A stretch of DNA of 64,000 nucleotides, from sequence record MH383160.1; one strand, given 5' to 3'. A program made the position numbers and the translations under genes. Each line of letters starts with the position of its first letter. Within the stretch, counting starts at the first letter, position 1. The notes below the pieces were generated by a model. It had not been told where the DNA came from. It did not search any database and worked only from the letters and a program-made list of their open reading frames with translations. Below, piece by piece: positions 1 through 64,000 of the stretch.

Positions 1-207
1 GGTCTAATCGGTGGTGGTAAAGCATCTTCAGTATACATTTATGTAAAACAAGATGCAACAGGTAATAGAAACTTTACTACTGATGGTACTTATGCGGTTG
101 TTGATGGAACTCTAAACAAAGCTGCTGGTAGTGTGACCATTTACCAAGTCATTTATGACGGTGTTAGTCCAGTAGCAGATATGTTTATTGCACAACGTAC
201 AGCTTAA
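1..207 (+). CDS. 3' end of a tail fibre/structural protein (truncated by window edge)
   Basis: Frame 1 open from base 1 to TAA at 205-207 (GLIGGGKASSVYIYVKQDATGNR...IAQRTA*); the QDATG-type module resembles the C-terminus of 42604..43140. Confidence 0.6.
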   Translation, partial: GLIGGGKASSVYIYVKQDATGNRNFTTDGTYAVVDGTLNKAAGSVTIYQVIYDGVSPVADMFIAQRTA

Positions 208-223
208 TAATTATAATAATAAA

Positions 224-248
224 GGTGTCACTCATTTTGGGTGACACC
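224..248 (+). terminator. stem-loop after partial fibre gene
   Basis: GGTGTCAC-N9-GTGACACC; no strong U tract. Confidence 0.4.
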
Positions 249-271
249 ATCATAACAAGTGAGGTAGTTAT

Positions 272-1051
272 ATGTTCACATATGTGAAAGGAAATTCAAA
301 AGAAAATTATGAATTGGGAAACATTATTTCCAATCCAATTGGTGTAAAAGGACTTAAAGAACGTCCTGGTGCAACACCAGAAGATCCACAAACCTATCGT
401 TATCTTTATAGTGATATTAGAACTCTTTATGGTATTTCAAGTAAAGATGGTTCCCCAGTAGAACCTAATGATGCTGTTAGAAAAGAAGAAGGTTTTTGGT
501 GGTTAGTGTATAAAAATGTTGGAAATGTTAATGCTATTGAACAACCGTTGGAGTTTATTAAATTAAAAGATGAAAATCAACCTATTGTTGAATTTTTTGA
601 AGACGCAACTGAAGAATATAAAGCACTCACTGTTCTCAAAACATATCATTATATTGATATGCCAATTGCAGACGTAAAGGCTGATTTAAAAGCAAGAACT
701 ATATCAGAACGTACAAATCGTATGAATTCTGGTTATATGTTCAACGGTCATCGTTACAGTACTGATATGTCTGGTCGTCAAATGCTTCTTAATTATTATA
801 CACAAGTCACTTCAGGCTCTGAAAGTGTTTCTATTTTTCTTGATGACGCAATTGTAAAATTATCTGCTGCTGAAATGACTCAACTATATACTGAATCATT
901 TGCAATGATTGAACAATTGTTTTCGGAATGTGACAAACAGTGTGCTGCAATTGATGCAGTTGATGATTTAGATCCTGATGCAATTTATAAAGCACAACAA
1001 GCTGCAATTTGGGTATATGAAGGTATTGATATTCCTGAACGTATACGTTAA
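272..1051 (+). CDS. tail fibre assembly-associated protein (DUF4376-like C-terminus)
   Basis: GAGG SD; C-terminal helical region (ERTNRMNSGYMFNGHRYSTD...) typical of fibre chaperone-type genes; located between fibre genes. Confidence 0.5.
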   Translation: MFTYVKGNSKENYELGNIISNPIGVKGLKERPGATPEDPQTYRYLYSDIRTLYGISSKDGSPVEPNDAVRKEEGFWWLVYKNVGNVNAIEQPLEFIKLKDENQPIVEFFEDATEEYKALTVLKTYHYIDMPIADVKADLKARTISERTNRMNSGYMFNGHRYSTDMSGRQMLLNYYTQVTSGSESVSIFLDDAIVKLSAAEMTQLYTESFAMIEQLFSECDKQCAAIDAVDDLDPDAIYKAQQAAIWVYEGIDIPERIR

Positions 1052-1057
1052 TTAATA

Positions 1058-1083
1058 AAGGTCAACTATTGTTGACCTTTTTT
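1058..1083 (+). terminator. intrinsic terminator
   Basis: AAGGTCAAC-TATT-GTTGACCTT followed by T run. Confidence 0.8.
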
Positions 1084-1105
1084 GTTTCATTATAAGGAAA
1101 AATAT

Positions 1106-2473
1106 ATGTATAATATAAGAACAGATATTATTGTAAATGGTGATATTAGTTATGACGGAGAACTAATAGGCAAGATACCAGTGCCTGATATTAGTACTAA
1201 AAATAAAAATATTTTAATTCATGAAAGTGATGGTTTATATGTTCCAGATAACACTATTATCTATCAAGGTGGAACTGGTATATCAATATCCTCTAATTTA
1301 ATATCCACAAAAATAAGTTCAACACAAGGAAATATTCTTAGTAATGATTCTAATGGTTTATATGTACCTGATAATACAGTAACATATACAGGTAGTGACA
1401 GTATTAAAATAGATAATAATATTATATCATCAAAAATAAGCACATCTTTAGGAAATATCCTTACAACTGATAGTACTGGTCTATTCGTACCGGATAATTC
1501 GATAACTTACAATGCTGGTACTGGCATTACTATTAGTGATGATGTAATAAGTGTGAAGGTTGACCCGACATCAGAAAACATACTATCTTCTACAAGTAAT
1601 GGTCTATTCGTACCTGATAATTCAGTATCTTATAGTGCTGGTTCCGGTGTTTCTATCAGTGGTGAAGTAATCAGTACTAAAATTAGTTCTACTTCTGGTA
1701 ATATACTATCTACTGACAGTACTGGATTATTTGTACCTAATACAAGAATAAATTACGTTGGTGGTACTGGTATATCTATTAGTTCAGAAACAATTTCAAC
1801 TAAAATAAGCACAACTCCAGGAAATACGTTAACAACTGACGTAAATGGGTTGTATGTTCCAACTGGACCATCCTCATATACTGCGGGAAATGGTATATCT
1901 ATTGACGCTAATGTAATTTCATCTAAAATCAGTAATACCTCTGGTAATATATTAACATCAGATAGTACTGGACTTTTTGTCAATGGAGCAAATACTACTA
2001 ACTTAGTACGCAGAAAAAGAGAACTATACTATTCAAATTTAAATGTTGAATTTAATGATGGCATTGAACAGAATCTAATACAAATTCTTAAAACACATAC
2101 ACCAACCAGCGGAACTCTTGATAGTTTCTTTAATACAACAAGTAATAAGTTAAATGTTTATAATTTTAATTCATCTCTAAACTTTAAATTAAATATATAT
2201 GGAACATGGACAACAAGTTCTTCTAATATGAGTTTTTCTATTAATTTCACAAATACACAATTTAACGTTATTAACCAAGTTAGAACTCCATCAGTCACTG
2301 TTGATACAATGTCTTTTAATACGTTTTTAAGCGTTGATGAAAACGGAAACTTAGTAACTAACGGTTCACCTATTACACTGGTTTCTCATGGTGGAAAATT
2401 CACAGTTACTAACTTGTTATTAATTGCTGAACAAATCGTTCCACCTTCATTGAGTAGTGTTTCTGTTGTTTAA
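1106..2473 (+). CDS. fibre protein with six 41-aa repeats and a C-terminal Sf6-type tail-needle knob domain
   Basis: Start moved to ATG 1106 (AAGGA SD); repeats GL(Y/F)VP...GNIL; C-terminus RRKRELYY...NGNLVTNGS...LLLIAEQ recognised as the Sf6/HS1 needle-knob pattern. Confidence 0.7.
   Translation: MYNIRTDIIVNGDISYDGELIGKIPVPDISTKNKNILIHESDGLYVPDNTIIYQGGTGISISSNLISTKISSTQGNILSNDSNGLYVPDNTVTYTGSDSIKIDNNIISSKISTSLGNILTTDSTGLFVPDNSITYNAGTGITISDDVISVKVDPTSENILSSTSNGLFVPDNSVSYSAGSGVSISGEVISTKISSTSGNILSTDSTGLFVPNTRINYVGGTGISISSETISTKISTTPGNTLTTDVNGLYVPTGPSSYTAGNGISIDANVISSKISNTSGNILTSDSTGLFVNGANTTNLVRRKRELYYSNLNVEFNDGIEQNLIQILKTHTPTSGTLDSFFNTTSNKLNVYNFNSSLNFKLNIYGTWTTSSSNMSFSINFTNTQFNVINQVRTPSVTVDTMSFNTFLSVDENGNLVTNGSPITLVSHGGKFTVTNLLLIAEQIVPPSLSSVSVV
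1232..1969 (+). repeat. six tandem 123-bp (41-aa) coding repeats
   Basis: GGT(T/C)TAT..GT.CC recurs at 1232, 1355, 1478 and onward with 123-bp period. Confidence 0.9.
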
Positions 2474-2482
2474 TAAAATATT

Positions 2483-2512
2483 AAGGCCAAACCTATGCTT
2501 GGCCTTTTCTTT
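2483..2512 (+). terminator. intrinsic terminator
   Basis: AAGGCCAA-N8-TTGGCCTT followed by T-rich tract. Confidence 0.75.
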
Positions 2513-2521
2513 TAACTAAAA

Positions 2522-2527
2522 TAAATA
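2522..2527 (+). promoter_or_regulatory. putative late promoter (TAAATA)
   Basis: TAAATA 35 nt upstream of the 2562 start; same motif precedes most structural genes. Confidence 0.5.
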
Positions 2528-2561
2528 CATCATATATAATCTATTCTGAGGAAATATTTAA

Positions 2562-4526
2562 ATGAGTATAAATCGAATTAGAGGTGATGGTGGTGTAATT
2601 ATTGATAGTAAATCTTTTTTAGAGTTACCGAAAGCACCATCAAAAGAAACCGCTGATGTAATAAGATCAGGGATGATTAGATACAATAAAGAATGGAAAT
2701 CATTTGAAGGTGTTCTGGATTTTGAAGATGGTAGTATGGCATATCGACGTTTTGCAAACCTAGATGCAAACGGTAAACTTCTTACTTCCCAATTACCAGA
2801 TTCAGTAACTAGTGGTTTACAATTTGTTGGTACATATAATCCCATCCCAGATGATATTGATCCACCTTTAGCACAAACTCCACTACCAGCACCAGCAGCA
2901 TCACTAAATGGTGATTATTATGTTGTTCGTGGTATTATGGATGCCGCACAAGCCCATTATGAAGCAAATAATCCACAAACAAGTCCTGTTACATTTACAC
3001 CTACAAATCCAACTGGACAAGGTAATTGGATTGAAATTTTATATTATGTTGACTCTAATCCAAATATATCTGGTGCTAAACTAGTAACATACGCTTTTGC
3101 TAGAATTATTACTGCATCTATTCCTAGTACTGGACATGATGGCCTTGAAAATTTAGCAACAGATACTGACTTGACCAAACCATTCGCATCTGGTGTTCCA
3201 ATGAACCAAACTGCACTTTCAGATGGCGATTGGATTATTATAACTGAAGATAAGAATATACGTCTTCGTCAGTCAAGAACAAGCATTTCCGCTGCTTCAG
3301 TATTATATGACAATACTGTAATGATTGCAAATCATCGTCAATTTAGGACAAACGCAGGGACCGTACAAACATCCATAGATAACGTTGTGATTGAGTGTTT
3401 ACGTAGAACTGGTGATTCTATGTATAATGATGGAACAGACGGCTCTGGACGTTTTGGGGTGGTGTATGGAAGTGCAGCAGCACCAGCATTGACATTTAAT
3501 AATAATCCGTTTGACCCAACGAATAACCCAGGTAATGACCCAGCTAAGTGGTCCGATGCTAATACTGGTATATTTCATCCAGCCGATGACGCAATTGGGT
3601 TCAGTACTGCTGGTACAGAACGTGTTCGAATTAATAATTCAACACTAACATTATATCAATCAACATCAACACCTGCATCAACACCAGTGCTAAGATTTGA
3701 TAATGCAACTAATACTAATGTGGGATTAAGTGCTAGTAGTAATATTATTTCATTTAGTTCAATGAATAAAGTTCAAGTTGAATTTAAAAATGGCGAAAGT
3801 GCGTTTCATGGTAATATTGTTGTTGATGGTACAAGTACATTAACTGGGGATACATCAGCTAGTAATATAACTGCTAGTGGTAATTTAAACATTCAAGGTA
3901 ATACCACATTAGGTGATGCTGCATCAGATACCATTACAGTTAATGGTGTTAGTACTTTTACAGCTAATACTAATTTTAATGGAACAACTAATAAATTTAA
4001 AAATATAAATCTATTAGCTAATGGTATAATTACATTAGAAAGTACTACTAATCAAAGTACAATCCAATTAGTTAGTTCTGATTTAAAACTATCAATGGGT
4101 AATTATGCTGATGTAAGTATCTATGATAATGGAACTATAAGAACACGTTTTAATAGATATGGTATCCAATTACCAGTACTAGCTACTATTGATAACTCTG
4201 TTGGCGTTGATGGTATGATTGCATACTCCAATACCGAGCGTACTTCAATGCAAAAAGTTCAAGGTCAATGGGTTCCAATTGGTTCAGGTTCAGTGAGAAC
4301 CGATGCTTTTACCATTTCATCTTGGGTATTAAGTGGTAACTACTACACCCTTACTGTAACAGCCTCAAACATCGTCACAGCAGAGATACAGGAACAGGTT
4401 AGTCCTGGTGTCTATACTCGTGTTGAGGTCGATAGCGTGACGTTTAACGGCACTAACGTAGTGTTCAGTATACCTTCAACACCTGATGTACGTTTCGACG
4501 GAAGAACATTGGTAACAATTAGATAA
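2562..4526 (+). CDS. virion structural protein (tail fibre/baseplate-associated)
   Basis: GAGGA SD; G/T/N/S-rich beta-repeat composition; GMIRYN motif; late-promoter motif. Confidence 0.55.
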   Translation: MSINRIRGDGGVIIDSKSFLELPKAPSKETADVIRSGMIRYNKEWKSFEGVLDFEDGSMAYRRFANLDANGKLLTSQLPDSVTSGLQFVGTYNPIPDDIDPPLAQTPLPAPAASLNGDYYVVRGIMDAAQAHYEANNPQTSPVTFTPTNPTGQGNWIEILYYVDSNPNISGAKLVTYAFARIITASIPSTGHDGLENLATDTDLTKPFASGVPMNQTALSDGDWIIITEDKNIRLRQSRTSISAASVLYDNTVMIANHRQFRTNAGTVQTSIDNVVIECLRRTGDSMYNDGTDGSGRFGVVYGSAAAPALTFNNNPFDPTNNPGNDPAKWSDANTGIFHPADDAIGFSTAGTERVRINNSTLTLYQSTSTPASTPVLRFDNATNTNVGLSASSNIISFSSMNKVQVEFKNGESAFHGNIVVDGTSTLTGDTSASNITASGNLNIQGNTTLGDAASDTITVNGVSTFTANTNFNGTTNKFKNINLLANGIITLESTTNQSTIQLVSSDLKLSMGNYADVSIYDNGTIRTRFNRYGIQLPVLATIDNSVGVDGMIAYSNTERTSMQKVQGQWVPIGSGSVRTDAFTISSWVLSGNYYTLTVTASNIVTAEIQEQVSPGVYTRVEVDSVTFNGTNVVFSIPSTPDVRFDGRTLVTIR

Positions 4527-4530
4527 TAAA

Positions 4531-4556
4531 AAAGGGAGAACATCAGTTCTCCCTTT
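4531..4556. terminator. bidirectional terminator between convergent genes
   Basis: AAAGGGAGAAC-ATCA-GTTCTCCCTTT with A run before and T run after. Confidence 0.85.
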
Positions 4557-4560
4557 TCTT

Positions 4561-5490
4561 TTATACAGCCATCGGTGCTTTAATTGTTGGCATTGGATTG
4601 TAATTCACTAATTTGAAAGAATCCATTGTGAAATCTTCAATATTAGTAATTTTAGGATCAAGCCATAATTCAGGTAATTCACGAGGTTTTCTCTGTAGTT
4701 GTTCTTTTACTTGTTCAACGTGGTTTTTATAAATGTGGCAATCACCACCATTCCAAATAAATTCACCAACATCTAAACCAGTAATTTGTGCAATCATATG
4801 AGTTAGTAGTGAATAACTACTGATATTAAATGGAACTCCCAAAAATAGATCAGCGGATCTTTGATGTAGAATGCAGCTTAGTTTCCCTTGTACTACACAA
4901 AATTGTACAAAGCTATGACAAGGTGGCAACGTCATATCATCAAGCTCACCAACGTTCCATGCACTTAGAATATGGCGACGACCATATGGATCGGAATTTA
5001 TACCATTGATTAGTTCCTGTAATTGGTCAGTTGTACGTTTCATAACAACACCATGTGAACCAGTATAATCGATAACTTTGTATCCTTTATCTTTTAATTC
5101 TTGAATTTCTTCAGTACTGGAACTAAATTTATAATCTTCCCATTCACGCCATTGCTTACCATACACTGGACCTAACTCACCATCAGTATAACCAAGAGCA
5201 ACGCCTTGATTTAGGTAATTATCTGTCCAAATAGTTTTCTTTTCTGTATCACGAGTTCCATGCAAAATTTCACAAAGGCGACGCTCATCATGGGAACCTT
5301 CAATAAACCATAGTAATTCTGAAGTCATTGCTTTCCAAGCTAGACGTTTTGTCGTTACTGCTGGGAAACCATCTTTAAGGTCAAAACGCATTTGTTGACC
5401 GATAAGTTTGATTGTTCCAACACCAGTACGGTCAACGCTTTCTACGCCTTCATCTAGAATTTTTTGATATAGTTCTTGTAGTTGTTTCAT
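4561..5490 (-). CDS. thyA: thymidylate synthase
   Basis: DRTGVGT, LPPCH catalytic Cys, QRSADLFLGVPFN, GDCHIYKNH motifs. Confidence 0.97.
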   Translation of the reverse strand: MKQLQELYQKILDEGVESVDRTGVGTIKLIGQQMRFDLKDGFPAVTTKRLAWKAMTSELLWFIEGSHDERRLCEILHGTRDTEKKTIWTDNYLNQGVALGYTDGELGPVYGKQWREWEDYKFSSSTEEIQELKDKGYKVIDYTGSHGVVMKRTTDQLQELINGINSDPYGRRHILSAWNVGELDDMTLPPCHSFVQFCVVQGKLSCILHQRSADLFLGVPFNISSYSLLTHMIAQITGLDVGEFIWNGGDCHIYKNHVEQVKEQLQRKPRELPELWLDPKITNIEDFTMDSFKLVNYNPMPTIKAPMAV

Positions 5491-6083
5491 TATTCTTCCT
5501 TGAAAAATGTAATAAAATGTTCCATATGTTTTTCTGTGGCATTGCGTGAACCAATACCAGTCCAGTTACCATGTGGTGCTGGAACGACGAATGTTTGTGC
5601 GAACTCTTTCAGTACTGTATCGAAATAAAATACTGAACGTGAATTCATATCATAACAATAAATTTCAGGATTTTCAACTGAATCCATATACATCTGTACT
5701 GCCCATGCAGTACCACCACTTACCTTAGTTGGTGATGTGATATTTGCAATACAATATATTCTTTCTGTATTAAGTATCTGATAACTATTCCTTGCAAGTA
5801 AGTTGTAAACATAAGAACCAGGCTTTGGCACTTTTCGCTGCAACGAGTAACATGCAATGTTTAGTTGATTTAATATAGAAATATCAGATAGAATATTGGA
5901 TGGTATTTCTAATATAGTACTTTCATCTACACTATGCTCATGACCTTTGAATGAAAAATTAATAACTTCAAATCCATTATTTTTTGCATAGATAGAAAAA
6001 AGGCGGTCAGCACCTGCTGCCCCGCCACTAAAACATACATTAGATAAACCTTTAATTGCTTCATCTAATTCATTCTTTTTCAT
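5490..6083 (-). CDS. SLOG-superfamily (YpsA/DprA-like) nucleotide-binding protein
   Basis: FSGGAAGAD glycine loop, SGGTAWAV and WTGIGSR motifs. Confidence 0.55.
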   Translation of the reverse strand: MKKNELDEAIKGLSNVCFSGGAAGADRLFSIYAKNNGFEVINFSFKGHEHSVDESTILEIPSNILSDISILNQLNIACYSLQRKVPKPGSYVYNLLARNSYQILNTERIYCIANITSPTKVSGGTAWAVQMYMDSVENPEIYCYDMNSRSVFYFDTVLKEFAQTFVVPAPHGNWTGIGSRNATEKHMEHFITFFKEE

Positions 6084-6086
6084 ATT

Positions 6087-6743: not shown

Positions 6744-6745
6744 AA

Positions 6746-7006: not shown

Positions 7007-7025
7007 GTATATTGGTACATTAACT

Positions 7026-7053: not shown

Positions 7054-7066
7054 ACTTATAAAAGAA

Positions 7067-56986: not shown

Positions 56987-57351
56987 GTGTGGATAATCTC
57001 TTTCACCCCATATTCTTTTATTGCTAATGAGCAAATTTCACATGGTTTAGCCGGAACAGGAATTCCATCTTTACTTATCCGTGCAATCAGTAAAGTATGA
57101 ACATCGGCACGAGCAGCCAGTAAACATGAAATTTCAGCATGAAGAAACTCACCTTGCGGTCGCCCAGCACGAATGGCGAAACCCTTCTGTACTGGGTGAG
57201 TCTGTGTATAAGAATTTGTGCGAGTTGCCAGTACTCTACCTTTTTTATCAAGTGCACGAGCAATAACACGATACCGTTTGTAATTTCCTACTTGTTCAAT
57301 AGGTGGCATCTGGCGTAATTCTTCGATTAGTTTCTCCAATTTACTATTCAT
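56983..57351 (-). CDS. zinc-dependent cytidine/dCMP deaminase-fold protein
   Basis: HAEISC and KPCEIC motifs. Confidence 0.85.
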   Translation of the reverse strand: MNSKLEKLIEELRQMPPIEQVGNYKRYRVIARALDKKGRVLATRTNSYTQTHPVQKGFAIRAGRPQGEFLHAEISCLLAARADVHTLLIARISKDGIPVPAKPCEICSLAIKEYGVKEIIHT

Positions 57352-57974
57352 AAGTCTAAGTCTATACCCTTTTCAATAGATTTCTCTAGAACCCAAAGTT
57401 TACATTCTTCACTCTCCAAATGTATCTTTGCCTCTTTCTGTTGTTCTATTGTACAAGACATTATGAATTCACGCAAGGCTTCTATCGTATTTTTTAAATT
57501 TTTTATATCATCGATGATTTTTTCTTTGGTTTCTTCATCGATTACACATGAACTCCAACTGTGTCGTTCCTCCCAAACAGTTTTAGTAGGATTAAAAATT
57601 GATGGAGTAGATTTGAATGCATGGATCTTATTAAATGTGTTATCTGCTTCTTGTTGGGTGTAATCACCATATGTGTTTAGCACATTTTTGTATAATTTAT
57701 CAATCGCCTCTTCATACGTATCACCACCACAATCCAATTGATAATCATGTGCTTGTACCCATTCGTCGTCTTGCTCAATATACATTGGTGAAAGAAATTC
57801 TACCCAAAATTGAGTCTTTGTATTCAATGCTTTGAAATCTTCAATTCGATTTGTCATTGGACACACATCATGAGGTTCTATATCAATCCTAGCTGGAACC
57901 ATATCTTTGTTTATGAATTTAGGATGAGCCAAAATCCACCAGTACTTTTCCGATGTAGTCATAGTAATCTCCAA
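57348..57974 (-). CDS. hypothetical protein
   Basis: 208-aa ORF. Confidence 0.7.
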   Translation of the reverse strand: MEITMTTSEKYWWILAHPKFINKDMVPARIDIEPHDVCPMTNRIEDFKALNTKTQFWVEFLSPMYIEQDDEWVQAHDYQLDCGGDTYEEAIDKLYKNVLNTYGDYTQQEADNTFNKIHAFKSTPSIFNPTKTVWEERHSWSSCVIDEETKEKIIDDIKNLKNTIEALREFIMSCTIEQQKEAKIHLESEECKLWVLEKSIEKGIDLDL

Positions 57975-58007
57975 TTAAAAAGTACTGCCATTATGACAGT
58001 ACTGATA

Positions 58008-58367
58008 TTAAATGTAACGTTTCTTTTTATAATCATACCCTACTGCTTTGTAAAAGTCAAACAAAGAAGCATGTTCAAATGTAGGTAATAGGTCATATGG
58101 ATGCTGATAGTTCGCAATACCAACAATAGCCAGCATTGATTCAGCAGTTCTTACGTTCTCACTATCCCATTCATCCAAACGCCACAGTGAGCAAAGTACC
58201 TCTCGTTCATGTTTCTTACCCAGAAAGAATCCAGCTTCACGGTCACGAAATGCACCTACACTGATAGTACTTTTGTACCAGTCTTTTTCACCATATAATG
58301 GCATACGGATAATATGTTTTTCTTTAGCTTCTCCAAAGCGATGAAGAAATGCTACATAATCACTCAT
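58008..58367 (-). CDS. hypothetical protein
   Basis: 119-aa ORF. Confidence 0.7.
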   Translation of the reverse strand: MSDYVAFLHRFGEAKEKHIIRMPLYGEKDWYKSTISVGAFRDREAGFFLGKKHEREVLCSLWRLDEWDSENVRTAESMLAIVGIANYQHPYDLLPTFEHASLFDFYKAVGYDYKKKRYI

Positions 58368-58534
58368 AATTTATAACCCATTACAGGTTTGGTATGATCC
58401 GGTTCGTAAGACTTTTCAGTACTGAACCCTCTGAAATTACCACGTCCTGGATTTGGACAAGCCATCCCTTGTACTGAATGCTTACCCTTATCTTTGCCAC
58501 AATTTTTACATTTGTAGTCAATTACTTCTTTCAT
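58364..58534 (-). CDS. small putative zinc-binding protein (56 aa, below track cutoff)
   Basis: MKEVIDYKCKNCGKDKGKH...ACP; ATGA overlaps at both ends. Confidence 0.65.
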   Translation of the reverse strand: MKEVIDYKCKNCGKDKGKHSVQGMACPNPGRGNFRGFSTEKSYEPDHTKPVMGYKL

Positions 58535-58764
58535 TGTGCATCCTTCGGAACAGTATTAAGACGTTTGCGATTCACAATCTTCCTGCACATGAGATTAAGA
58601 TCTTGCCCATGACGCATAGTATGACATGCGTATAGTGTTCCTTGGTGATTTAGTTTTGTTAAACCTTGACGGATGATTTCAGCATCCATCTCATCAACTT
58701 TAGGAGCACAACCACAGAGAATAATGGATACAAATATTGTTAATGTAATGAATATATTTTTCAT
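58531..58764 (-). CDS. small lipoprotein
   Basis: Signal peptide with ILCGC lipobox. Confidence 0.65.
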   Translation of the reverse strand: MKNIFITLTIFVSIILCGCAPKVDEMDAEIIRQGLTKLNHQGTLYACHTMRHGQDLNLMCRKIVNRKRLNTVPKDAQ

Positions 58765-58776
58765 GATATTTTTTTC

Positions 58777-59157
58777 TCATTTAGTAAAACACGAATTATT
58801 ACTGATAAGTTCATCAAGTACGTTTTGTACTTCGATAGAATTAATATCAACTTTGTAATAATTATAGTTTTTAATTCTAAAATGTTCTTTTGATATATCA
58901 ACTTTAAATTCAATAATATCAAGATTACCAATAAAATCAGACTTATCAGTTCTTAAATCCAAAATACCTAATTCCGGTTTTTGTGGTTTACATAAAATCA
59001 AACCAAATTTATTTTCTTCAAATGCCTGATTAAACATATCATAATAATCACTAATAACAAATCTAATATTATCAGTGCTTAACTTTCCTGATTTTCCTTT
59101 TTTATAAACAGAAACAATGTTTAGTTCAAAGGTTTTACCAAAGCGTGTGATTTTCAT
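58777..59157 (-). CDS. hypothetical protein
   Basis: 126-aa ORF. Confidence 0.65.
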   Translation of the reverse strand: MKITRFGKTFELNIVSVYKKGKSGKLSTDNIRFVISDYYDMFNQAFEENKFGLILCKPQKPELGILDLRTDKSDFIGNLDIIEFKVDISKEHFRIKNYNYYKVDINSIEVQNVLDELISNNSCFTK

Positions 59158-60125
59158 TTTGGGCTATAACCACTTTTAATTTTGGAAATTACTTTCTTCT
59201 CGAAGAACTTACGTGCTTCTTCAATAGTTTCGAATTCTTCACCATCAGTAGTACTGGTTTTACCAATAGCACCGTACTCAATAATTACTTCACACACTGG
59301 AGCATTCAATTCAATATTATAGAATTTGTTTGAAGAACCGTGAACATATTCCAAATGTACATTATCAGGAATGTTCTGTACATAATCATAGTTCTTGAAG
59401 ATAATATCAATCATATTTTCTTCGCCGCGATCAGGAAATAGTTCAGTATTATTCAGTACTAAACGCTGTGCAGCACGGAACATATCAAAATATTGTTCGC
59501 CTTTTTTCAGTTCTTTTGTATCAGAACAGAAATGACCATAGTATTCTACATAATCATTCCAAGGATAAATTCCTTCATCAGCAGTTTCAGACACGTAAGT
59601 TTCATCTTGTGGAACTTTAAAACCACGAGTTTTTGGATGAGAAATTAAGCACAGTGAAATATTATGACCGATATCTGAATCATCAGTAATACTACCACCA
59701 ACCATATGAACAACATTTTTAATACTTTCAAAATCTACATCTTCAATTTCATGATACATTAAATGTTCTTCAATATTACTTACTAGTAATGAATTACCAT
59801 TTCCGGCATCGAATTCAAAAATGAAAAGTTCTACACAATCTTCTTCTTTCATTTCAATAGTATCACTGAGTTTAATATACTCATTTTTTAATTGTTCAAT
59901 ATTTTCATGAGAACCAAAACTATAACGTGAACTGATATAACTACTACCGTCCAACCATCCCATATCCCAAGGTTCTTCTGACATGTATTCTGAGCTATAG
60001 AAATCAGTCAAATCATCTCTCTGAGTACAAACCGTAAGAGAACGAACATTACTAAGACCTTGAACTTCAAGATTCAGTACTGTAGTATTACCAATTTTTT
60101 GTTCAGAAATAATTTTAGTTTTCAT
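59154..60125 (-). CDS. protein with a C-terminal WGR domain
   Basis: SSNKFYNIEL...EYGAIG...EARKFFEKKVISKIKSGY. Confidence 0.7.
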   Translation of the reverse strand: MKTKIISEQKIGNTTVLNLEVQGLSNVRSLTVCTQRDDLTDFYSSEYMSEEPWDMGWLDGSSYISSRYSFGSHENIEQLKNEYIKLSDTIEMKEEDCVELFIFEFDAGNGNSLLVSNIEEHLMYHEIEDVDFESIKNVVHMVGGSITDDSDIGHNISLCLISHPKTRGFKVPQDETYVSETADEGIYPWNDYVEYYGHFCSDTKELKKGEQYFDMFRAAQRLVLNNTELFPDRGEENMIDIIFKNYDYVQNIPDNVHLEYVHGSSNKFYNIELNAPVCEVIIEYGAIGKTSTTDGEEFETIEEARKFFEKKVISKIKSGYSPK

Positions 60126-60134
60126 TTAAAATAC

Positions 60135-60329
60135 CTATTGAATTGATTTACGCCATTTGGCTAGTTTAACATTCATGTAAGTAAGGAACTCACGTTCCAT
60201 CTCTTCTGAACTCATATTATCGCATTACAAAGCGAACATGTCAAGTGCACAAATGCAAAGATCTACAGCTTCACCTTTGACACCATCTTTACCTGCTTCT
60301 TTATATGATAACCCATCACGGATGTTCAT
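60135..60329 (-). pseudogene. MazG-like (NTP pyrophosphohydrolase-fold) remnant with in-frame TAA
   Basis: MNIRDGLSYKEAGKDGVKGEAVDLCICALDMFAL*CDNMSSEEMEREFL...; TAA at 60225-60227. Confidence 0.55.
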
Positions 60330-60337
60330 ATTTCATA

Positions 60338-60994
60338 TCATCCTACTTTTTTCGATTGGAACAATGCAATCTGTACGCGTGTAATGAACTCACGCTCTAC
60401 TTCTTCAGCACTGTGTCCTTCATATTGTGTCTTGAAAAGTTCCATTGCTTTTAGTGCCATCTGTACAGAAATGTCTGTAATACTTTCAGTACTGGTACTT
60501 TCAAATACATTTTTGAGGCTTAGTTCATCATCACTAACATCATCAACTTCAACTGGGTTGTTGTTTTGTTCATCAATGTAACGTAAAGCTTTGTACTCTG
60601 CTTTTGTTAGATTTTCATACCAACGTGGGTGGTGGAACAAATCATGCATTGTAACTTTTGCTGCTTCCATGAGAAGTAATAGCTCTTCATTTCTGCGAAT
60701 ATGTTTTTCTTCACCTTTATGATTTTTGTAAGTATATGCACAACGCATAATGGCTAATCGAACTTCACCTGCTTTGGTGATAGTGTATGAATGTATTGCA
60801 TTATCATAATCACTTTCCCATTTCTGACCAGCATATTCGTACCAAAGTTCATTAGTTTCCCATTTAATGAAATCAAATTCTAACAAACTGTCAATCAACT
60901 TAGCCAAATTACCACTGTACTCACGGCTAATGATATTGAAACCACCATTGTACTTTGCAAGGTACAGAATCTTTTCTTGAGTTACATTTTTCAT
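60338..60994 (-). CDS. hypothetical protein
   Basis: 218 aa; C-terminus resembles the downstream pseudogene. Confidence 0.7.
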   Translation of the reverse strand: MKNVTQEKILYLAKYNGGFNIISREYSGNLAKLIDSLLEFDFIKWETNELWYEYAGQKWESDYDNAIHSYTITKAGEVRLAIMRCAYTYKNHKGEEKHIRRNEELLLLMEAAKVTMHDLFHHPRWYENLTKAEYKALRYIDEQNNNPVEVDDVSDDELSLKNVFESTSTESITDISVQMALKAMELFKTQYEGHSAEEVEREFITRVQIALFQSKKVG

Positions 60995-61332
60995 TACATG
61001 TAATCCTTGATGTATTTTAGCAGTTTAGATTTCTCTTCGGTACTTAATGATTTCTTGTTCATTAAGTGTTTCATTTCTTGACGTTCAATTTCTTCACATC
61101 TTTTAGATTCAGCTTCAATTCGTGTATTATATTCTTCGTCAGTTTCTTCTCTGGTCCAAATTACATTGTATCCATGAAAACCGCCGTAACCACTGTCTGG
61201 TGAAAGACTAATGTGACCGTTATATTCAGCACGATACTTATTAAGAGTGTCAATAAAGGTATCAATGCCACACGGTTCAATTTCAATATAACCAATCACT
61301 ACAGTAACGTCAATTTTGTTCATAAAGTTCAC
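60994..61332 (-). CDS. hypothetical protein
   Basis: 112 aa; REETDEEYNTR. Confidence 0.7.
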   Translation of the reverse strand: MNFMNKIDVTVVIGYIEIEPCGIDTFIDTLNKYRAEYNGHISLSPDSGYGGFHGYNVIWTREETDEEYNTRIEAESKRCEEIERQEMKHLMNKKSLSTEEKSKLLKYIKDYM

Positions 61333-61342
61333 CTATAAAATT

Positions 61343-61360
61343 AGGGAGCATTAGCTCCCT
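61343..61360 (-). terminator. stem-loop overlapping the stop codon
   Basis: AGGGAGC-ATTA-GCTCCCT. Confidence 0.6.
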
Positions 61361-61908
61361 TTGTATTGATGTTTACGTTTAGTACTGTATTTCCAACCAG
61401 TACTATGTCTTGTTCTGATATCGTCCCAATACGATGGTAATGAACGCATCTTACGTCTTCCACGTATATCAGGTTCCCCCTCATCCTTCAGTACTGCACA
61501 AGCCATACGACGCTCTTGTTGTGTCTTAGGACGCTTGTATCGGGAGTGGTTATGTTTGTACATATACGAACGCTTATGTCGCCATTCCGTATCACGAGCT
61601 TTACGTTTATGTTCCCAGTACTCATTATAGAGTATCATGTATTCACCCATAAGTAAATCAGGAGATACAAGTAATCCTTTTTCAGTACAAAGATAATAAC
61701 CCACAAACTTTTCTGGAAACATTTCGTAATAGAAACGGTTCTTCCAAAATGTTTCACGATTCTTTTTGTTGAATTCAGCTAAATCGAATTTCATCTTACT
61801 GTGGAAACGGTCTATACCGTCATGTTCCGCAATGTACTCTAACAGATTATCAATAATCTCAACTTTACCAGAATCGTGATACAACGTAAATGTTTGGTCA
61901 AAAAACAT
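61351..61908 (-). CDS. hypothetical protein with basic C-terminus
   Basis: AAGGAG SD; R..RSLPSYWDD...WK. Confidence 0.75.
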   Translation of the reverse strand: MFFDQTFTLYHDSGKVEIIDNLLEYIAEHDGIDRFHSKMKFDLAEFNKKNRETFWKNRFYYEMFPEKFVGYYLCTEKGLLVSPDLLMGEYMILYNEYWEHKRKARDTEWRHKRSYMYKHNHSRYKRPKTQQERRMACAVLKDEGEPDIRGRRKMRSLPSYWDDIRTRHSTGWKYSTKRKHQYKGS

Positions 61909-62134
61909 ATGAAATCTCCTTTAAGTTAAAATAACCTAATGGAAAGTCATTCTTCCTTTAATACATGTTCTCATGATTTGTTCCTTTTGTCAAGATATAG
62001 ATATAAAAAATCCCTGCCAAAAGACAGGGACGAAAAACTGAAATAACACATGGAGTTCTTTTTAATTTAATAAAAAGTATTATTATTCTTATAAAAGTAT
62101 TTATTAAGAACTCCACAATATGTCTTCAAATGAA

Positions 62135-62323
62135 TCAAAAACCTTTCTGAGCTACTAGTTCACGGTACTGTGCACGAGTTAGTACACCTTGTTTGCGTAG
62201 AGCTTGTAGACCGGATAGGGTTTCACTCTTACGTTGTTCGTACATACGTTGTTCTTTAGATTGAATAACTTTCTCTTTCTTTACTTTTGCTACTGGTTCT
62301 TTTTTCTTAGGTTGTTTAGCCAT
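62135..62323 (-). CDS. small basic protein
   Basis: AAGGAG SD; K-rich. Confidence 0.7.
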   Translation of the reverse strand: MAKQPKKKEPVAKVKKEKVIQSKEQRMYEQRKSETLSGLQALRKQGVLTRAQYRELVAQKGF

Positions 62324-62354
62324 TTTATATCTCCTTCTGTATTATGATAACAAC

Positions 62355-62388
62355 ATTATATCATGTATGGGACATTATGTCCCATACA
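62355..62388 (-). promoter_or_regulatory. GGGACA-N17-TATAAT promoter embedded in a perfect inverted repeat
   Basis: TGTATGGGACAT-T-ATGTCCCATACA at 62364-62388; TGATATAAT -10. Confidence 0.65.
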
Positions 62389-62391
62389 ATA

Positions 62392-63831
62392 TTACATATT
62401 TTCTTCAGCAAATTCAGCTAGTGGTGAGCGAACAACACCTTCAAGTTCGATGACACGACAACCTGCCCAATCTTTAAACTTTTCAGTTACATATGTCAAA
62501 CCACTGTTAACAGGACTAATAAACTTACTGTCAATCTGACTCAAGTTACCCATAATTACTACTTTACAGTTTAATCCTGCTCGTGTCAAGATTGTTTTGG
62601 CTTGTGCAGGTGTAATGTTTTGGAATTCATCAACTACTAGAATAGTGTTGGTGAATGAACGTCCACGTACAAAGTTTAGTGCTTTAAATTGAATAACATT
62701 ACGTTTCATAATCTCTTCAATACTACCTTGTGGGTTAGCATCATCTTTATGAAGAAACTCTAACGCGTCAATTGCGGCTCCACAGAATGGAATAACTTTT
62801 TCTGCTTCTGAACCTGGCAAGAAACCAATATCTTCAAACTGTGAGTCTTGAGTTTTAGAGAAGATGATTCGGTCGTATTTACGTTTTTCCAGTACTAATT
62901 CTAATGCAGTAGCAATCGTAATTAGTGTTTTACCAGTACCAGCAGAACCTAGCAGTACTGTTAGATGTACATCAGGATCGAGAATACTGTTGATGGCGAG
63001 TGCTTGTTGGATATTCTTTGCTTTAATATCCCATACTTTAGCACGTAAAGCTACTGATTGTCCAATATCTTGGAATACCAAAATATCTTCTGGTGTTAGT
63101 GTTCCATCATCTTCCTCAATTGCTGATTGACCTTCGTACACAAATAATACGTCTGCATCATCATATAGATAATCACCGATGCATAGATTTTGTGGAAGCA
63201 AATGTTCAATCAAGCTTTTAGAAATGTAATGATACAAACGACGACCAACTTGTTCGGATTGAATATTAGTATTGGTTAAGTTGCTATATACTTCCCAAAA
63301 ATTGATTTCCAAATGGTGTTGACCAATGTGAATCAAATCACTATCACCAATAACAATATCATGGCGATAATCTTGTACCTCGACACCATAACTTAGTGCT
63401 TTGATACGCATGTTGATATCACGAGTTACCAGTACTGATTCTGTTGCTAAAGCTACCAGAATGATTTTATCATCAGGTACTGTGCTTTTGAGAAGGGTTT
63501 GAACTTTCTCTTCTGAACCTTTAGTACGAATTAGTGCTTCAGCTTCTTCGTTTGTAATAACAAACAATTTGCTATCAGGATTCATATTGGTATGAACATC
63601 AGCAATATTAACACCAGTACTACTAATCTCATCATGTGATGCATCTGCAATAATTGCTTCAATGTTACGAATAGCAACACGAGCATCGCGTGAAACATCT
63701 ACATTACGACTCTTAATTGAATCCAATTCTTCCAGTACTGTAAATGGTAGAATGATTGCAGCACCATCAAAAGCAATAGATGCATTAGGGTCAGATAGTA
63801 GTACGTTTGTGTCAATTGTATATTTTTTCAT
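62392..63831 (-). CDS. phoH: PIN-PhoH family ATPase
   Basis: PIN IDTNVLL...ELD; Walker A GSAGTGKT; RGRSF; VDEFQN; GNLSQID; RSPLA. Confidence 0.93.
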   Translation of the reverse strand: MKKYTIDTNVLLSDPNASIAFDGAAIILPFTVLEELDSIKSRNVDVSRDARVAIRNIEAIIADASHDEISSTGVNIADVHTNMNPDSKLFVITNEEAEALIRTKGSEEKVQTLLKSTVPDDKIILVALATESVLVTRDINMRIKALSYGVEVQDYRHDIVIGDSDLIHIGQHHLEINFWEVYSNLTNTNIQSEQVGRRLYHYISKSLIEHLLPQNLCIGDYLYDDADVLFVYEGQSAIEEDDGTLTPEDILVFQDIGQSVALRAKVWDIKAKNIQQALAINSILDPDVHLTVLLGSAGTGKTLITIATALELVLEKRKYDRIIFSKTQDSQFEDIGFLPGSEAEKVIPFCGAAIDALEFLHKDDANPQGSIEEIMKRNVIQFKALNFVRGRSFTNTILVVDEFQNITPAQAKTILTRAGLNCKVVIMGNLSQIDSKFISPVNSGLTYVTEKFKDWAGCRVIELEGVVRSPLAEFAEENM

Positions 63832-63891
63832 AAAACATCCTTGAGTTATGAGTACATCCTTGTACTCGACTAATGTTATTGACTCGGATTA

Positions 63892-63999
63892 TTACATATT
63901 TGGTTCGTATTCAACATAGCAACGTGAACCTCGAACCTTTTCTTCCCAGCACTCCTGGTAAACAAGTTGACCAATTGAAACTGGTTCTCTTGATAGTCC
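63892..63999 (-). CDS. 3' end of a hypothetical protein (truncated by window edge)
   Basis: GLSREPVSIGQ...EYEPNM* open to the window end. Confidence 0.5.
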   Translation of the reverse strand, partial: GLSREPVSIGQLVYQECWEEKVRGSRCYVEYEPNM

Positions 64000-64000
64000 A

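What the first reader, a model, noticed from the sequence alone, without database searches (positions are those of the whole stretch)
1..64000. Window-wide over-representation of the palindrome AGTACT (extended CAGTACTG): a HIP1-like genomic signature in a phage
A hand count gives about 135-140 AGTACT sites (e.g. 758, 1193, 1472, 5113, 15382, 15440, 36795, 43115, 61381, 63734), roughly one per 460 bp. A zero-order expectation at about one-third GC is about 20-25. About 35 sites are the full octamer CAGTACTG, where about 1 is expected. Sites occur in all three codon phases (S-T at 758, Q-Y at 15440, V-L at 15382) and in structural, metabolic, accessory and intergenic DNA, so the selection or mutational bias acts on DNA, not protein. 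Phages usually avoid palindromes because of restriction; this is the opposite. The pattern recalls cyanobacterial HIP1 (GCGATCGC), which has been linked to a methyltransferase. Inference: a phage-encoded modification/repair system creates or maintains these sites, or a protein binds them genome-wide for compaction, packaging or protection. The motif is non-polar, unlike Chi or KOPS.
Basis: partly seen in the sequence, partly recalled or inferred. Interest (0 to 1): 0.88.

Follow-up and report, generated by a model that had tools for sequence, protein, structure and literature searches.

The report
Hyper-abundant AGTACT palindrome in jumbo phage
A family of giant phages of gut bacteria carries the six-letter palindrome AGTACT about ten times more often than chance and about forty times more densely than a sample of its host's DNA. 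The word is kept there by selection on the DNA itself, so it looks like a built-in 'this is phage DNA' tag whose reader is still unknown.

Summary
The window (Escherichia phage UB, a 353-kb 121Q/PBECO4-type jumbo phage) has 138 AGTACT where 17-28 are expected, and 37 CAGTACTG where 0.6-4 are expected. AGTACT is the top outlier among all hexamers.

The excess survives shuffles that keep amino acids and codon usage (126 vs 34.5±5.2). It holds in all three codon phases and in non-coding DNA. The same genome purges other palindromes: GCGC occurs 0 times in 353 kb.

The signature is genome-wide (905 sites) and present in four enterobacterial RaK2-like genera. It is absent from the Pseudomonas relative PA5oct, and phi92 avoids the word completely. 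Sites are conserved beyond neutral expectation yet also turn over.

Three further results:
- About 77% of the host-polymerase early promoters in the terminal repeats of two genera hold AGTACT at fixed positions beside the -35 or -10 box.
- Next to the Asteriusvirus terminal repeat lie two islands with no AGTACT, only one-orientation half-words of opposite polarity.
- An adenine methyltransferase tracks the signature; a cytosine methyltransferase does not.

Best reading: a selected recognition tag, probably methylated, with an unknown reader. It resembles cyanobacterial HIP1. I found no published description.

The parts
1..64000 (.). Window-wide field of 138 AGTACT sites, about one per 460 bp. 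125 lie inside annotated CDSs and 13 are intergenic or at gene boundaries.
   Evidence: Coordinates are listed. Expected 17-28. Synonymous-codon shuffle gives 34.5±5.2 against 126 observed in CDSs. Spacing CV is 0.82, P=0.009.
757..63740 (.). 37 full octamers CAGTACTG. They start at 757, 1717, 3602, 5112, 5610, 8717, 10589, 11394, 13519, 15439, 16738, 19859, 21914, 24689, 27675, 28227, 31299, 32374, 34014, 34746, 37647, 37821, 41343, 46645, 49391, 50954, 53051, 54060, 54975, 57997, 58417, 60075, 60487, 61489, 62953, 63430 and 63733.
   Evidence: Expected 0.6-4.0. Codon-preserving shuffle gives 2.3 against 35 observed in CDSs.
758..763 (+). Example of a phase-0 site (AGT ACT = Ser-Thr) in CDS 272-1051.
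15382..15445 (-). Two sites in the head-completion gene (15249-15677). The site at 15382 is phase 2 (GTA CTx, Val-Leu). The site at 15440 is phase 1 (CAG TAC, Gln-Tyr).
36795..37017 (.). Three sites (36795, 36820, 37012) in a stretch that the UB record leaves unannotated (36013-37163).
   Evidence: annotation.
57981..58003 (.). Pair of intergenic sites 17 bp apart (57981, 57998). The second is a full CAGTACTG.
13526..15381 (.). Longest site-free stretch in the window (sites at 13520 and 15382, 1,862 bp start to start). No 2-kb bin of the genome outside the terminal region is empty.

Best explanation
AGTACT (best form CAGTACTG) is a recognition word kept by selection in the DNA of RaK2-like jumbo phages of Enterobacterales. 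My committed reading has three parts.

1. The sites are the target of a phage-encoded, sequence-specific system. One component is a modification enzyme. The best candidate is the clade-wide PF05869 Dam-type adenine methyltransferase. Modification would make about 900 ScaI-type sites safe in a genome that otherwise survives by purging restriction palindromes. A second component is an unidentified reader.

2. At fixed positions beside the -35 and -10 boxes of the host-RNA-polymerase early promoters in the terminal repeat, the word (or its methylation state) helps control early transcription.

3. Spread about every 400 bp, at about 40x the density in a host DNA sample, the word tags the chromosome as phage DNA for a DNA-handling process such as replication, recombination, repair or nuclease discrimination. 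That process reads each half-word, (C)AGTAC or GTACT(G), with a direction. The palindrome is the two orientations superposed.

Shown here: the enrichment; its DNA-level nature; the clade distribution; conservation with turnover; the promoter positions; the polar islands; the presence and distribution of the methyltransferases.

Inferred: that the sites are methylated; which enzyme does it; that a reader exists; and what process uses the tag.
For: Enrichment at the DNA level: 138 vs 17-28 in the window and 905 vs 100-182 in the genome, with every 10-kb bin enriched. It survives amino-acid- and codon-preserving shuffles in all phases. Coding and non-coding densities are alike. Sites are uniform along genes.

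Clade specificity:
- Positive: UB 9x, CBB 12x, Muenster 11x, BF 11x, XbC2 11x.
- Negative: PA5oct 3 vs 14; phi92 0 vs 13-15.

Selection:
- 68% of sites are intact at 85% genome identity, against 43% for same-composition hexamers.
- One-mismatch neighbours become AGTACT at 3x the median rate, rank 2 of 1,422 hexamers. Gains balance losses: 34 sites are UB-only and 39 are fEgEco12-only.
- 20 of 65 sites coincide between UB and Muenster orthologues at 58% protein identity, against 0.24 expected.
- Spacing is more even than random.

Promoters:
- 27 of 35 UB and 21 of 27 CBB sigma70-type promoters in the terminal repeats contain AGTACT.
- The positions are AGTACTg-TATAAT, AGTAC-TTGCA/TTGACA and TTGAC-AGTACT. 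The site centres are about 10-11 bp apart.
- The position 7 bases before TATAAT is found in 13/43 UB and 16/30 CBB repeat TATAATs, against 0/336 in a 160-kb control stretch of the UB genome.

Directional half-words:
- Island UB 177.3-185.0 kb has 0 AGTACT, 0 AGTAC on the + strand and 40 TGTACT (3.7 expected), in all codon phases.
- A second island has the opposite polarity.
- Both are reproduced in fEgEco12 at about 80% identity, although only 50% of individual sites are shared.

Need for protection: GCGC is at 0 against 150-290 expected, and about 20 GC-rich hexamer palindromes are at 0. phi92 avoids AGTACT completely. The host sample has 3 against 11.6 expected.

Methyltransferase: PF05869 and C5 enzymes are present. 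The PF05869 enzyme, with the same neighbouring nucleotidyltransferase gene, is found in Asteriusvirus, Alcyoneusvirus and Mimasvirus. Homologues of the enzyme are also found in Eneladusvirus, Munch and EJP2.
Against: Methylation:
- No methyltransferase specificity could be determined. PF05869 enzymes that have been characterised are, to my knowledge, GATC-specific or non-specific.
- The PF05869 correlation is confounded by phylogeny.
- Methylation protects sites but does not by itself explain why more of them would be favoured.

Reader: no candidate protein was identified.

Promoters: the fixed positions could partly reflect common descent of duplicated promoters.

Polar islands: they exist only in Asteriusvirus, not in the CBB terminal repeat or the DNA next to it, so they may be a lineage-specific add-on. 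A symmetric dimer that binds double-stranded DNA does not explain strictly one-orientation half-words. Conversely, a purely directional reader does not explain the promoter positions.

Host density rests on a single 50-kb sample.
Confidence: 0.35

Rival explanations
1. Pure DNA-binding-protein site without methylation. A phage-encoded or virion-delivered dimeric protein binds CAGTACTG. It regulates the early promoters as a shut-off repressor or co-activator and also occupies the dispersed sites, for example to organise or shield phage DNA or to concentrate RNA polymerase on it.
For: Palindrome with additive half-site preferences (C at -1, G avoided) and a weak phased A/T pattern in the flanks. 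Fixed promoter positions on one helical face in two genera. Highest density in the first-expressed terminal repeat. About 40x the density of the host sample.
Against: About 900 specific sites per genome would titrate a regulator. A shielding coat conflicts with the extreme avoidance of other restriction sites. One-orientation half-word islands are hard to explain with a symmetric dimer. Unprotected ScaI-type sites would be a liability at injection. No candidate protein was found.
Confidence: 0.22
2. Non-adaptive drive, as in Elhai's model for HIP1. A motif-directed mismatch or heteroduplex repair bias converts near-matches to AGTACT during the frequent recombination of these T4-like phages. 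The word then spreads without having a function of its own.
For: Raised gain rate from one-mismatch neighbours. The recurrent AGAACT<->AGTACT difference changes the protein in every reading frame. Sites turn over while density stays constant. Enrichment is found wherever the sequence is tolerated. Orphan methyltransferases are present. The HIP1 precedent (PMC4390886).
Against: Neighbours are not depleted. Differences hit all six positions rather than one mismatch type. No Vsr/Hef homologue in UB. A drive does not predict over-even spacing, conserved promoter positions in two genera, or islands where one orientation is strictly forbidden.
Confidence: 0.15
3. A word read purely by direction by a strand-tracking enzyme: a Chi-like attenuator or recombination hotspot for a phage nuclease-helicase, a site-specific nickase site, or an extended primase site. 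AGTACT would simply be the bidirectional form needed where travel direction is unpredictable.
For: Two islands with strict and opposite polarity that do not follow transcription direction. Both are conserved at about 80% identity despite site turnover. Polarity builds up over about 25 kb toward the terminal-repeat boundary. The contributions of the two half-words are nearly independent: 54% x 51% predicts 28%, and 35% is observed.
Against: The islands are absent in CBB. In the islands the base before GTAC is specifically T (62/69), not just 'not A'. This reading does not explain the promoter positions. Trinucleotide primase sites need no enrichment (background knowledge).
Confidence: 0.15
4. 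Hijack of the host nucleoid-occlusion protein SlmA, whose binding site GTGAGTACTCAC has an AGTACT core.
For: Shared central hexamer.
Against: SlmA needs G1, T2, A4, G5 and a purine at position 3 (PMC3020112). Only 1 of 905 sites fits GT.AGTACT.AC. The GT and AC flanks are at or below background. Position 3 is C in 45% and G in 9% of sites. GAGTACTC occurs 0 times in the window.
Confidence: 0.02
5. Artefact of base composition, codon usage, amino-acid content or a dispersed repeat family.
For: Dipeptides compatible with the word are about 1.5x enriched: the amino-acid-preserving shuffle gives 34.5 and the codon-order shuffle 22.7.
Against: All the shuffles and Markov models of orders 0-3 fall far short of the observed count, and even the order-4 model expects 108 against 138. 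All phases and non-coding DNA are enriched. Flanks are unique. Control palindromes are not enriched.
Confidence: 0.01

Closest known systems
HIP1 (GCGATCGC), the highly iterated palindrome of cyanobacteria (Elhai 2015, PMC4390886; Xu et al. 2018, PMC5861425)
   Same: A short palindrome enriched by one to two orders of magnitude, in all reading frames and in intergenic DNA. It is conserved beyond neutral expectation and quasi-regularly spaced. Enrichment is nested, with an inner core less enriched than the full word. The genomes encode orphan methyltransferases. The function is unresolved.
   Different: A different word, AT-rich rather than GC-rich. It is in a virus rather than a cellular genome, and in a genome that otherwise purges palindromes. 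No methyltransferase has been tied to the word. It sits at fixed positions in early promoters. It is accompanied by strand-polar half-word islands, which as far as I know are not described for HIP1.
Chi (GCTGGTGG) and KOPS: over-represented, oriented words read by DNA translocases
   Same: A genome-identity word at much higher density than in foreign DNA. In the two Asteriusvirus islands the half-word is strictly oriented, and the polarity switches at a defined locus.
   Different: Over most of the genome the word is a palindrome and therefore orientation-free. No translocase has been linked to it. E. coli Chi itself is separately enriched in this phage.
Uptake sequences (DUS and USS) of Neisseria and Haemophilus
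   Same: About one copy per kb in all frames. They act as a self-tag maintained by a molecular drive or by selection.
   Different: Those are 9-12-mers recognised by the DNA-uptake machinery. Nothing equivalent is known for a lytic phage.
Dam/GATC epigenetic systems (SeqA, MutH, methylation-sensitive promoters such as IS10 pIN, P1 cre, Mu mom)
   Same: A palindromic methylation site used both genome-wide, for strand or self discrimination, and inside promoters as a timing switch. The phage encodes a Dam-family enzyme.
   Different: GATC itself is depleted here (0.6x; TGATCA 0.38x). Methylation of AGTACT is unproven. GATC is not ten-fold enriched in enterobacteria (my recollection; not measured here).
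SlmA-binding sequence GTGAGTACTCAC of E. coli
   Same: The central hexamer is identical.
   Different: The flanking bases required for binding are absent.

Membership tests
HIP-type highly iterated palindrome | A short palindrome at least ten-fold over-represented against composition and Markov models | tested here: met
   Hexamer 8-9x against order 1, 5x against order 2. Octamer 43-60x against orders 0-1. Top-ranked word.
HIP-type highly iterated palindrome | Present in all codon phases and in non-coding DNA, so a DNA-level cause | tested here: met
   Phases 67/19/40 observed against 21/4/9 after synonymous shuffle. Non-coding 1.8-2.6 per kb.
HIP-type highly iterated palindrome | Sites conserved more than neutral controls | tested here: met
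   0.68 vs 0.43 at 85% identity. 20 of 65 sites coincide across genera against 0.24 expected.
HIP-type highly iterated palindrome | A cognate orphan methyltransferase recognises the word or its core, and its presence tracks the word | tested here: inconclusive
   PF05869 and C5 methyltransferases are present. PF05869 tracks all positive genera but its specificity is unknown. The C5 orthologue is absent from signature-positive BF and is DNMT3-like.
HIP-type highly iterated palindrome | Quasi-periodic or regular spacing | tested here: inconclusive
   CV 0.82-0.88 against about 1.0 (P=0.003-0.009) in two regions and 0.92 (P=0.10) in a third. No explicit period was tested.
Chi/KOPS-type oriented genome word | A non-palindromic word with strand polarity tied to replication or translocation direction | tested here: not met
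   In the window and most of the genome the word is a palindrome and the half-words are balanced. Polarity exists only at UB 160-193.6 kb.
Chi/KOPS-type oriented genome word | Recognised by a known translocase or nuclease | not testable with these tools
   Needs biochemistry.
SlmA-binding site | G1, T2, R3, A4, G5 in each half-site | tested here: not met
   1 of 905 sites fits. Flanks are at or below background.
Dispersed repeat (REP, MITE or similar) | Shared flanking sequence beyond the core | tested here: not met
   No information beyond positions +/-1 in coding-region sites.
Sigma70 early-promoter element | Fixed position relative to the -35 and -10 hexamers | tested here: met
   True only in the terminal repeats of UB and CBB. 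Only 2 of 20 promoter-like matches in the window hold the word, at no fixed position.
Restriction target protected by cognate methylation | The word is modified in virion DNA | not testable with these tools
   Needs ScaI/RsaI digestion or SMRT/Nanopore calling.

The most novel reading that the evidence does not exclude
RaK2-like jumbo phages do not hypermodify their bases (none of T4's hydroxymethylcytosine or glucosylation genes in CBB, per its genome paper). Instead they may write their identity into the sequence. In this reading a short oriented word, (C)AGTAC, is laid down on both strands as the palindrome AGTACT about every 400 bp. Phage DNA machinery reads it with a direction. The word doubles as an epigenetic or regulatory element in the early promoters. 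One-orientation islands beside the terminal repeat would steer a directional process there, such as origin firing, end processing or packaging. This would be a viral self-recognition system analogous to Chi or USS, and a new solution to the problem that T4 solves with hydroxymethylcytosine.
Probability: 0.25. Interest if true: 0.92.

Novelty: new variant of a known kind. Interest (0 to 1): 0.8.

Why it matters
How phages with ordinary bases tell their own DNA from the host's is an open question. This covers transcription take-over, host-DNA destruction, repair and recombination.

Here a whole clade of 350-kb phages pays a measurable coding cost to keep about 900 copies of one palindrome, while deleting almost every other restriction-type palindrome. 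That gives a concrete handle that can be tested at the bench:
- one word;
- two candidate methyltransferases;
- a defined set of promoters;
- two natural 'negative' islands.

It also offers a tractable viral model for the unresolved HIP1 problem. The word could serve as a sequence marker for recognising this clade in metagenomes. ScaI/RsaI sensitivity and recoding constraints matter to anyone engineering these phages for therapy.

Tried and rejected
1. Composition, codon or amino-acid artefact: rejected by Markov models, dinucleotide shuffles and two codon shuffles.

2. Dispersed repeat: rejected because the flanks are unique.

3. Very-short-patch type conversion: one-mismatch neighbours, including AGTATT and AATACT, are not depleted. 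Turnover affects all six positions. No Vsr/Hef homologue is found in UB by tblastn with the Muenster Hef-like protein.

4. C5-methyltransferase as the cause:
- phi92 has a 51%-identical enzyme but zero AGTACT;
- BF has the signature but no orthologue in the syntenic 45 kb, and no Serratia or Yersinia record appears among hits at E<=1e-60;
- the enzyme is DNMT3-like;
- the Eneladusvirus paper speaks loosely of 'adenine or cytosine' methylases, so a non-orthologous cytosine enzyme is not excluded.

5. SlmA hijack: rejected.

6. Site-free islands as recently acquired DNA: rejected. They are conserved in all Asteriusviruses at 92-98% identity and are rich in GTAC.

7. My first placement of the terminal repeat at UB 176.9-197.6 kb, taken from the start of the Sharanji record, was wrong. 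Records holding both repeat copies place it at about 193.9-213.4 kb.

8. Gene-boundary signal: sites are uniform along genes and only dip at start and stop codons.

9. Iterons or an origin-like repeat structure between the two islands: only paralogous small-ORF repeats were found.

10. Literature searches for the word, for AGTACT methylation motifs and for clade papers found no description. No match of an AGTACT-bearing early promoter was found in E. coli genomes.

11. No PDB relative of the PF05869 enzyme.


Full report
IDENTITY OF THE WINDOW. The window is 100% identical to Escherichia phage UB (MH383160.1), positions 62001-126000. UB is a 353,081-bp Asteriusvirus of the 121Q/PBECO4 type, a member of the RaK2-like jumbo myoviruses. 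From 4.5 kb onward nearly all genes lie on the minus strand. They encode tail, neck, nucleotide-metabolism and many unknown proteins.

AGTACT occurs 138 times. Expectations are:
- 21.6 at zero order;
- 17.2±4.1 (maximum 30) in dinucleotide-preserving shuffles;
- 27.6 and 52.3 under Markov-2 and Markov-3 models.

CAGTACTG occurs 37 times against 0.6-4.0 expected. AGTACT is the most deviant of all 4,096 hexamers at every Markov order tried. The next two are its overlapping extensions CAGTAC and GTACTG. Enrichment is nested: GTAC 2x, AGTACT 8x, CAGTACTG about 50x.

About 26 GC-containing hexamer palindromes have no copy at all in the window.

THE CAUSE ACTS ON DNA, NOT PROTEIN. I used the 86 annotated CDSs and permuted synonymous codons within each gene, which keeps protein sequence and codon usage. 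This gives 34.5±5.2 sites (maximum 50 in 500 trials) against 126 observed. Each phase is 3-4.6x enriched. Permuting codon order gives 22.7.

Sites in annotated non-coding DNA are almost as dense as in coding DNA: 1.8 vs 2.2 per kb in the window, and 2.6 vs 2.3 per kb genome-wide outside the terminal region. Sites are uniformly distributed along genes and only dip at start and stop codons.

Flanks are unique from site to site. Only the adjacent base matters (C 45-51%, G 4-9%, and the mirror image on the other side). There is also a weak T-rich (-2 to -4) and A-rich (-7 to -9) pattern. Spacing is a little more even than random: CV 0.82, P=0.009 in the window; 0.88, P=0.003 over UB 0-176 kb.

GENOME AND CLADE. 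The whole UB genome has 905 AGTACT (100-182 expected) and 190 CAGTACTG (4-11 expected). Every 10-kb bin is enriched.

Samples of 28-50 kb from relatives show the same single outlier:

| Phage | Genus | Observed | Expected |
|---|---|---|---|
| Pectobacterium phage CBB | Mimasvirus | 161 | 13 |
| Xanthomonas-isolated XbC2 | Mimasvirus | 84 | 7.8 |
| Klebsiella phage Muenster | Alcyoneusvirus | 113 | 10.5 |
| Serratia phage BF | Eneladusvirus | 116 | 10.4 |

The more distant Pseudomonas relative PA5oct has 3 vs 14. The unrelated coliphage phi92 has 0 vs 13-15. A 50-kb sample of E. coli K-12 has 3 vs 11.6 expected. The phage therefore carries the word at about 40x the density of that host sample (small sample).

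The same phage genome is otherwise extremely poor in palindromes. GCGC occurs 0 times in 353 kb (150-290 expected), about 20 GC-rich hexamer palindromes are at 0, and GATC is at 0.6x.

SELECTION AND TURNOVER. Against fEgEco12 (85% identity over 45 kb), 71 of 105 UB sites are intact (0.68). The figure for hexamers of the same composition is 0.43, and AGTACT ranks 9th of 484 hexamers.

Sites private to each genome are balanced (34 vs 39). One-mismatch neighbours become AGTACT at 6.3%, against a median of 2.0% for other hexamers (rank 2 of 1,422; rank 1 is GTACTG). On the short UB and 121Q branches, polarised with fEgEco12, there are 10 gains and 7 losses.

Differences involve all six positions. 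They include the recurrent AGAACT<->AGTACT change, which alters the protein in every reading frame.

Across genera, 20 of 65 UB sites fall on the same aligned codon positions as Muenster sites in 56 orthologues averaging 58% protein identity. Chance gives 0.24. Density is thus maintained by both retention and replacement, over the whole history of the clade.

EARLY PROMOTERS. UB has a hot zone at about 193.6-214 kb, with 43-65 sites per 10 kb over bins 190-220 kb. Asteriusvirus records that contain both terminal-repeat copies place the roughly 20-kb direct terminal repeat at UB ~193.9-213.4 kb, which is this hot zone:
- G17 starts at UB ~193.9 kb and ends at ~213.4 kb, and shows double the number of matches;
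- vB_Ec-M-J annotates 'Direct Terminal Repeats' there;
- a 20.7-kb repeat was determined for Sharanji with PhageTerm.

CBB's annotated 22.5-kb repeat is equally dense, at 5-8 sites per kb.

Read on the coding strand, the intergenic sites lie inside sigma70-type promoters. 27 of 35 such promoters in the UB repeat and 21 of 27 in the CBB repeat contain the word. The positions are:
- AGTACTg-TATAAT (12 in UB, 13 in CBB);
- AGTAC-TTGCA/TTGACA (11 in UB, 15 in CBB);
- in UB also TTGAC-AGTACT.

The three site centres (about -37.5, -27.5 and -16.5) are 10-11 bp apart, so they fall on one face of the helix. The position 7 bases before TATAAT is found in 13/43 and 16/30 repeat TATAATs, and in 0/336 TATAATs in a 160-kb control stretch of the UB genome. 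BF shows the same AGTACTTGACA arrangement among its top octamers. The CBB genome paper described these RpoD-like early promoters but not the word.

POLAR ISLANDS (OUTSIDE THE WINDOW). Just inside the repeat boundary UB has two stretches with no AGTACT: 177,297-185,013 and 188,896-193,641. They are not foreign DNA. Every Asteriusvirus has them at 92-98% identity.

Island 1 is very rich in GTAC (69 copies). In 62 of these the preceding base on the + strand is T.
- TGTACT occurs 40 times (3.7 expected) and TGTACTG 20 times (0.76 expected), in all three codon phases.
- AGTAC on the + strand occurs 0 times.

Island 2 has the mirror arrangement, with 6-8 AGTACA and 0 GTACT on the + strand. The 3.9 kb between the islands has 18 ordinary palindromes. 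The TGTACT bias builds up from about 160 kb: 17, 22 and 43 per 10 kb against 3, 8 and 2 for the complement.

All genes in both islands are on the same strand, so the polarity is not transcriptional.

fEgEco12, only about 80% identical here, has the same two islands: 0 AGTACT, 0 AGTAC(+) and 38 TGTACT(+), then 0 GTACT(+) and 6 AGTACA(+). Only 18 of 36 individual TGTACT sites are shared. The polarity itself is therefore maintained.

CBB has no such islands.

I take this as evidence that the unit under selection is an oriented half-word and that the palindrome is its two-way form. What reads it is unknown.

CANDIDATE ENZYMES. UB encodes two DNA methyltransferases:
- a 173-aa PF05869 Dam-type adenine methyltransferase;
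- a 286-aa C5-cytosine methyltransferase.

The C5 enzyme aligns end to end with DNMT3 catalytic domains, so it has a minimal recognition domain. Its orthologue is found in Asteriusvirus, Mimasvirus and Alcyoneusvirus. It is missing from the syntenic region of BF and from all Serratia, Yersinia and Eneladus-type Erwinia records at E<=1e-60. phi92 carries a 51% homologue and yet avoids the word.

The PF05869 enzyme has homologues in every signature-positive genus examined, and in Asteriusvirus, Alcyoneusvirus and Mimasvirus the same nucleotidyltransferase gene lies next to it. Its specificity cannot be read from sequence, and it has no solved relative. The PA5oct paper mentions no methyltransferase at all, which is only weak support.

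No Vsr/Hef-like nuclease is present in UB.

HOW IT MOST LIKELY WORKS. A genome that has removed nearly every GC-containing restriction palindrome cannot carry 905 ScaI-type sites unprotected. This holds all the more if AGTACT-cutting enzymes matter in its hosts, as phi92's complete avoidance and the host's own depletion suggest. I therefore think the sites are modified, most plausibly by the clade-wide adenine methyltransferase.

Protection alone does not explain a ten-fold excess. The excess, its even spacing, its retention across genera and the promoter positions point to a positive role as a recognition tag that is almost exclusive to phage DNA.

In the early promoters the tag, or its methylation state, would modulate transcription by the host polymerase. 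It could, for example, distinguish the injected, fully modified genome from newly replicated copies. Along the chromosome it would serve a DNA-handling process that reads half-words with a direction.

Shown: the statistics, the conservation, the promoter placement, the polarity and the gene distribution. I give this composite 0.35. The rivals are a pure binding-protein site, a non-adaptive repair drive, a purely directional word, SlmA hijack and artefact. They are weighed in their own section of this report.

COMPARISON WITH WHAT IS KNOWN. HIP1 of cyanobacteria is the nearest analogue in behaviour (PMC4390886, PMC5861425). This word is not a member of that family: the word, the host kingdom and the genomic context differ, and the defining link to a methyltransferase is unproven here.

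It shares the 'genome identity word' logic of Chi, KOPS and uptake sequences, but it is palindromic over most of the genome. It shares only a core hexamer with the SlmA site.

I found no description of this signature in full-text searches or in the clade's genome papers.

VERDICT. The feature is real and very strong. It acts at the DNA level, is specific to one phage clade and is maintained by selection. Its mechanism is unresolved but now experimentally approachable.

Noticed in passing
whole window (0 copies); whole UB genome: GCGC is completely absent from the 353-kb genome (150-290 expected). About 20 GC-rich hexamer palindromes are also at 0, including CCATGG, TGGCCA, GCATGC, GGTACC, GGATCC, GTCGAC, GAGCTC and CTCGAG. 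In contrast EcoRI, EcoRV and AT-rich palindromes are not avoided.
   Followed up: partly
window-wide; e.g. TATTTATA only at 52686, TATAAATA none: The core of the T4-type late promoter is strongly depleted. In the window TAAATA is 9 vs 43-72 and TATTTA is 34 vs 48-91. Genome-wide they are 97 vs 324 and 133 vs 294. This suggests selection against spurious late promoters.
   Followed up: no
window 34529 and 40225 (GCTGGTGG, + strand); UB 194.8-212.6 kb: Genuine E. coli Chi is more than 10x enriched in the phage: 9 GCTGGTGG and 16 CCACCAGC against roughly 0.7 and 1.1 expected from base composition. Nine co-oriented copies cluster inside the terminal repeat, at least one of them in a promoter spacer.
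   Followed up: partly
UB 177,297-185,013 and 188,896-193,641 (outside the window; L006:1297-9013 and 12896-17641): Two AGTACT-free islands beside the terminal repeat carry strictly one-orientation half-words (TGTACT on one strand, then the reverse). They are conserved in fEgEco12 at about 80% identity and absent in CBB.
   Followed up: yes
UB 193.6-213.5 kb (L006/L007); CBB 1-22456 (L018): The terminal repeats are packed with sigma70-type early promoters followed by a short leader and a GGGGAG-type ribosome-binding site. About 77% of them hold AGTACT at fixed positions.
   Followed up: yes
window 7101-8525 (-): The CDS annotated 'putative HNH endonuclease' matches DUF2201_N (putative metallopeptidase) plus a VWA-like domain, not HNH. 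It is also the longest gene in the window with no AGTACT.
   Followed up: partly
window-wide: GATC is depleted (102 vs about 200 in the window; 0.6x genome-wide; TGATCA 0.38x) even though the phage encodes a Dam-family methyltransferase. This hints that the enzyme may not be GATC-specific.
   Followed up: no
L020 (E. coli K-12 1,000,001-1,050,000): The host sample is itself poor in AGTACT (3 vs 11.6 expected). Two of the three copies are full CAGTACTG.
   Followed up: no
window 27499-28131, 36013-37163 and other gaps: Several stretches left unannotated in the UB record carry ORFs that are annotated in 121Q and fEgEco12, so the UB annotation is incomplete. Examples are 121Q genes 535-537 and 516-517.
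   Followed up: no
window 35572-36012, 28782-29114 and 59154-60125 (-): Relatives annotate a Dps-like starvation-inducible DNA-binding protein and an HPF/RaiA-type ribosome-associated protein (labelled 'putative sigma' in UB); UB itself annotates a WGR-domain protein. I did not examine any of them as a possible reader of the word.
   Followed up: no
L011:8239-8823 and 15772-17481 (Klebsiella phage Muenster): Muenster is annotated with a Mom-like DNA-modification enzyme. It also has a Hef-like homing endonuclease with a Vsr-like fold, inserted between the topoisomerase II subunit genes. The Hef-like gene has no counterpart in UB.
   Followed up: partly
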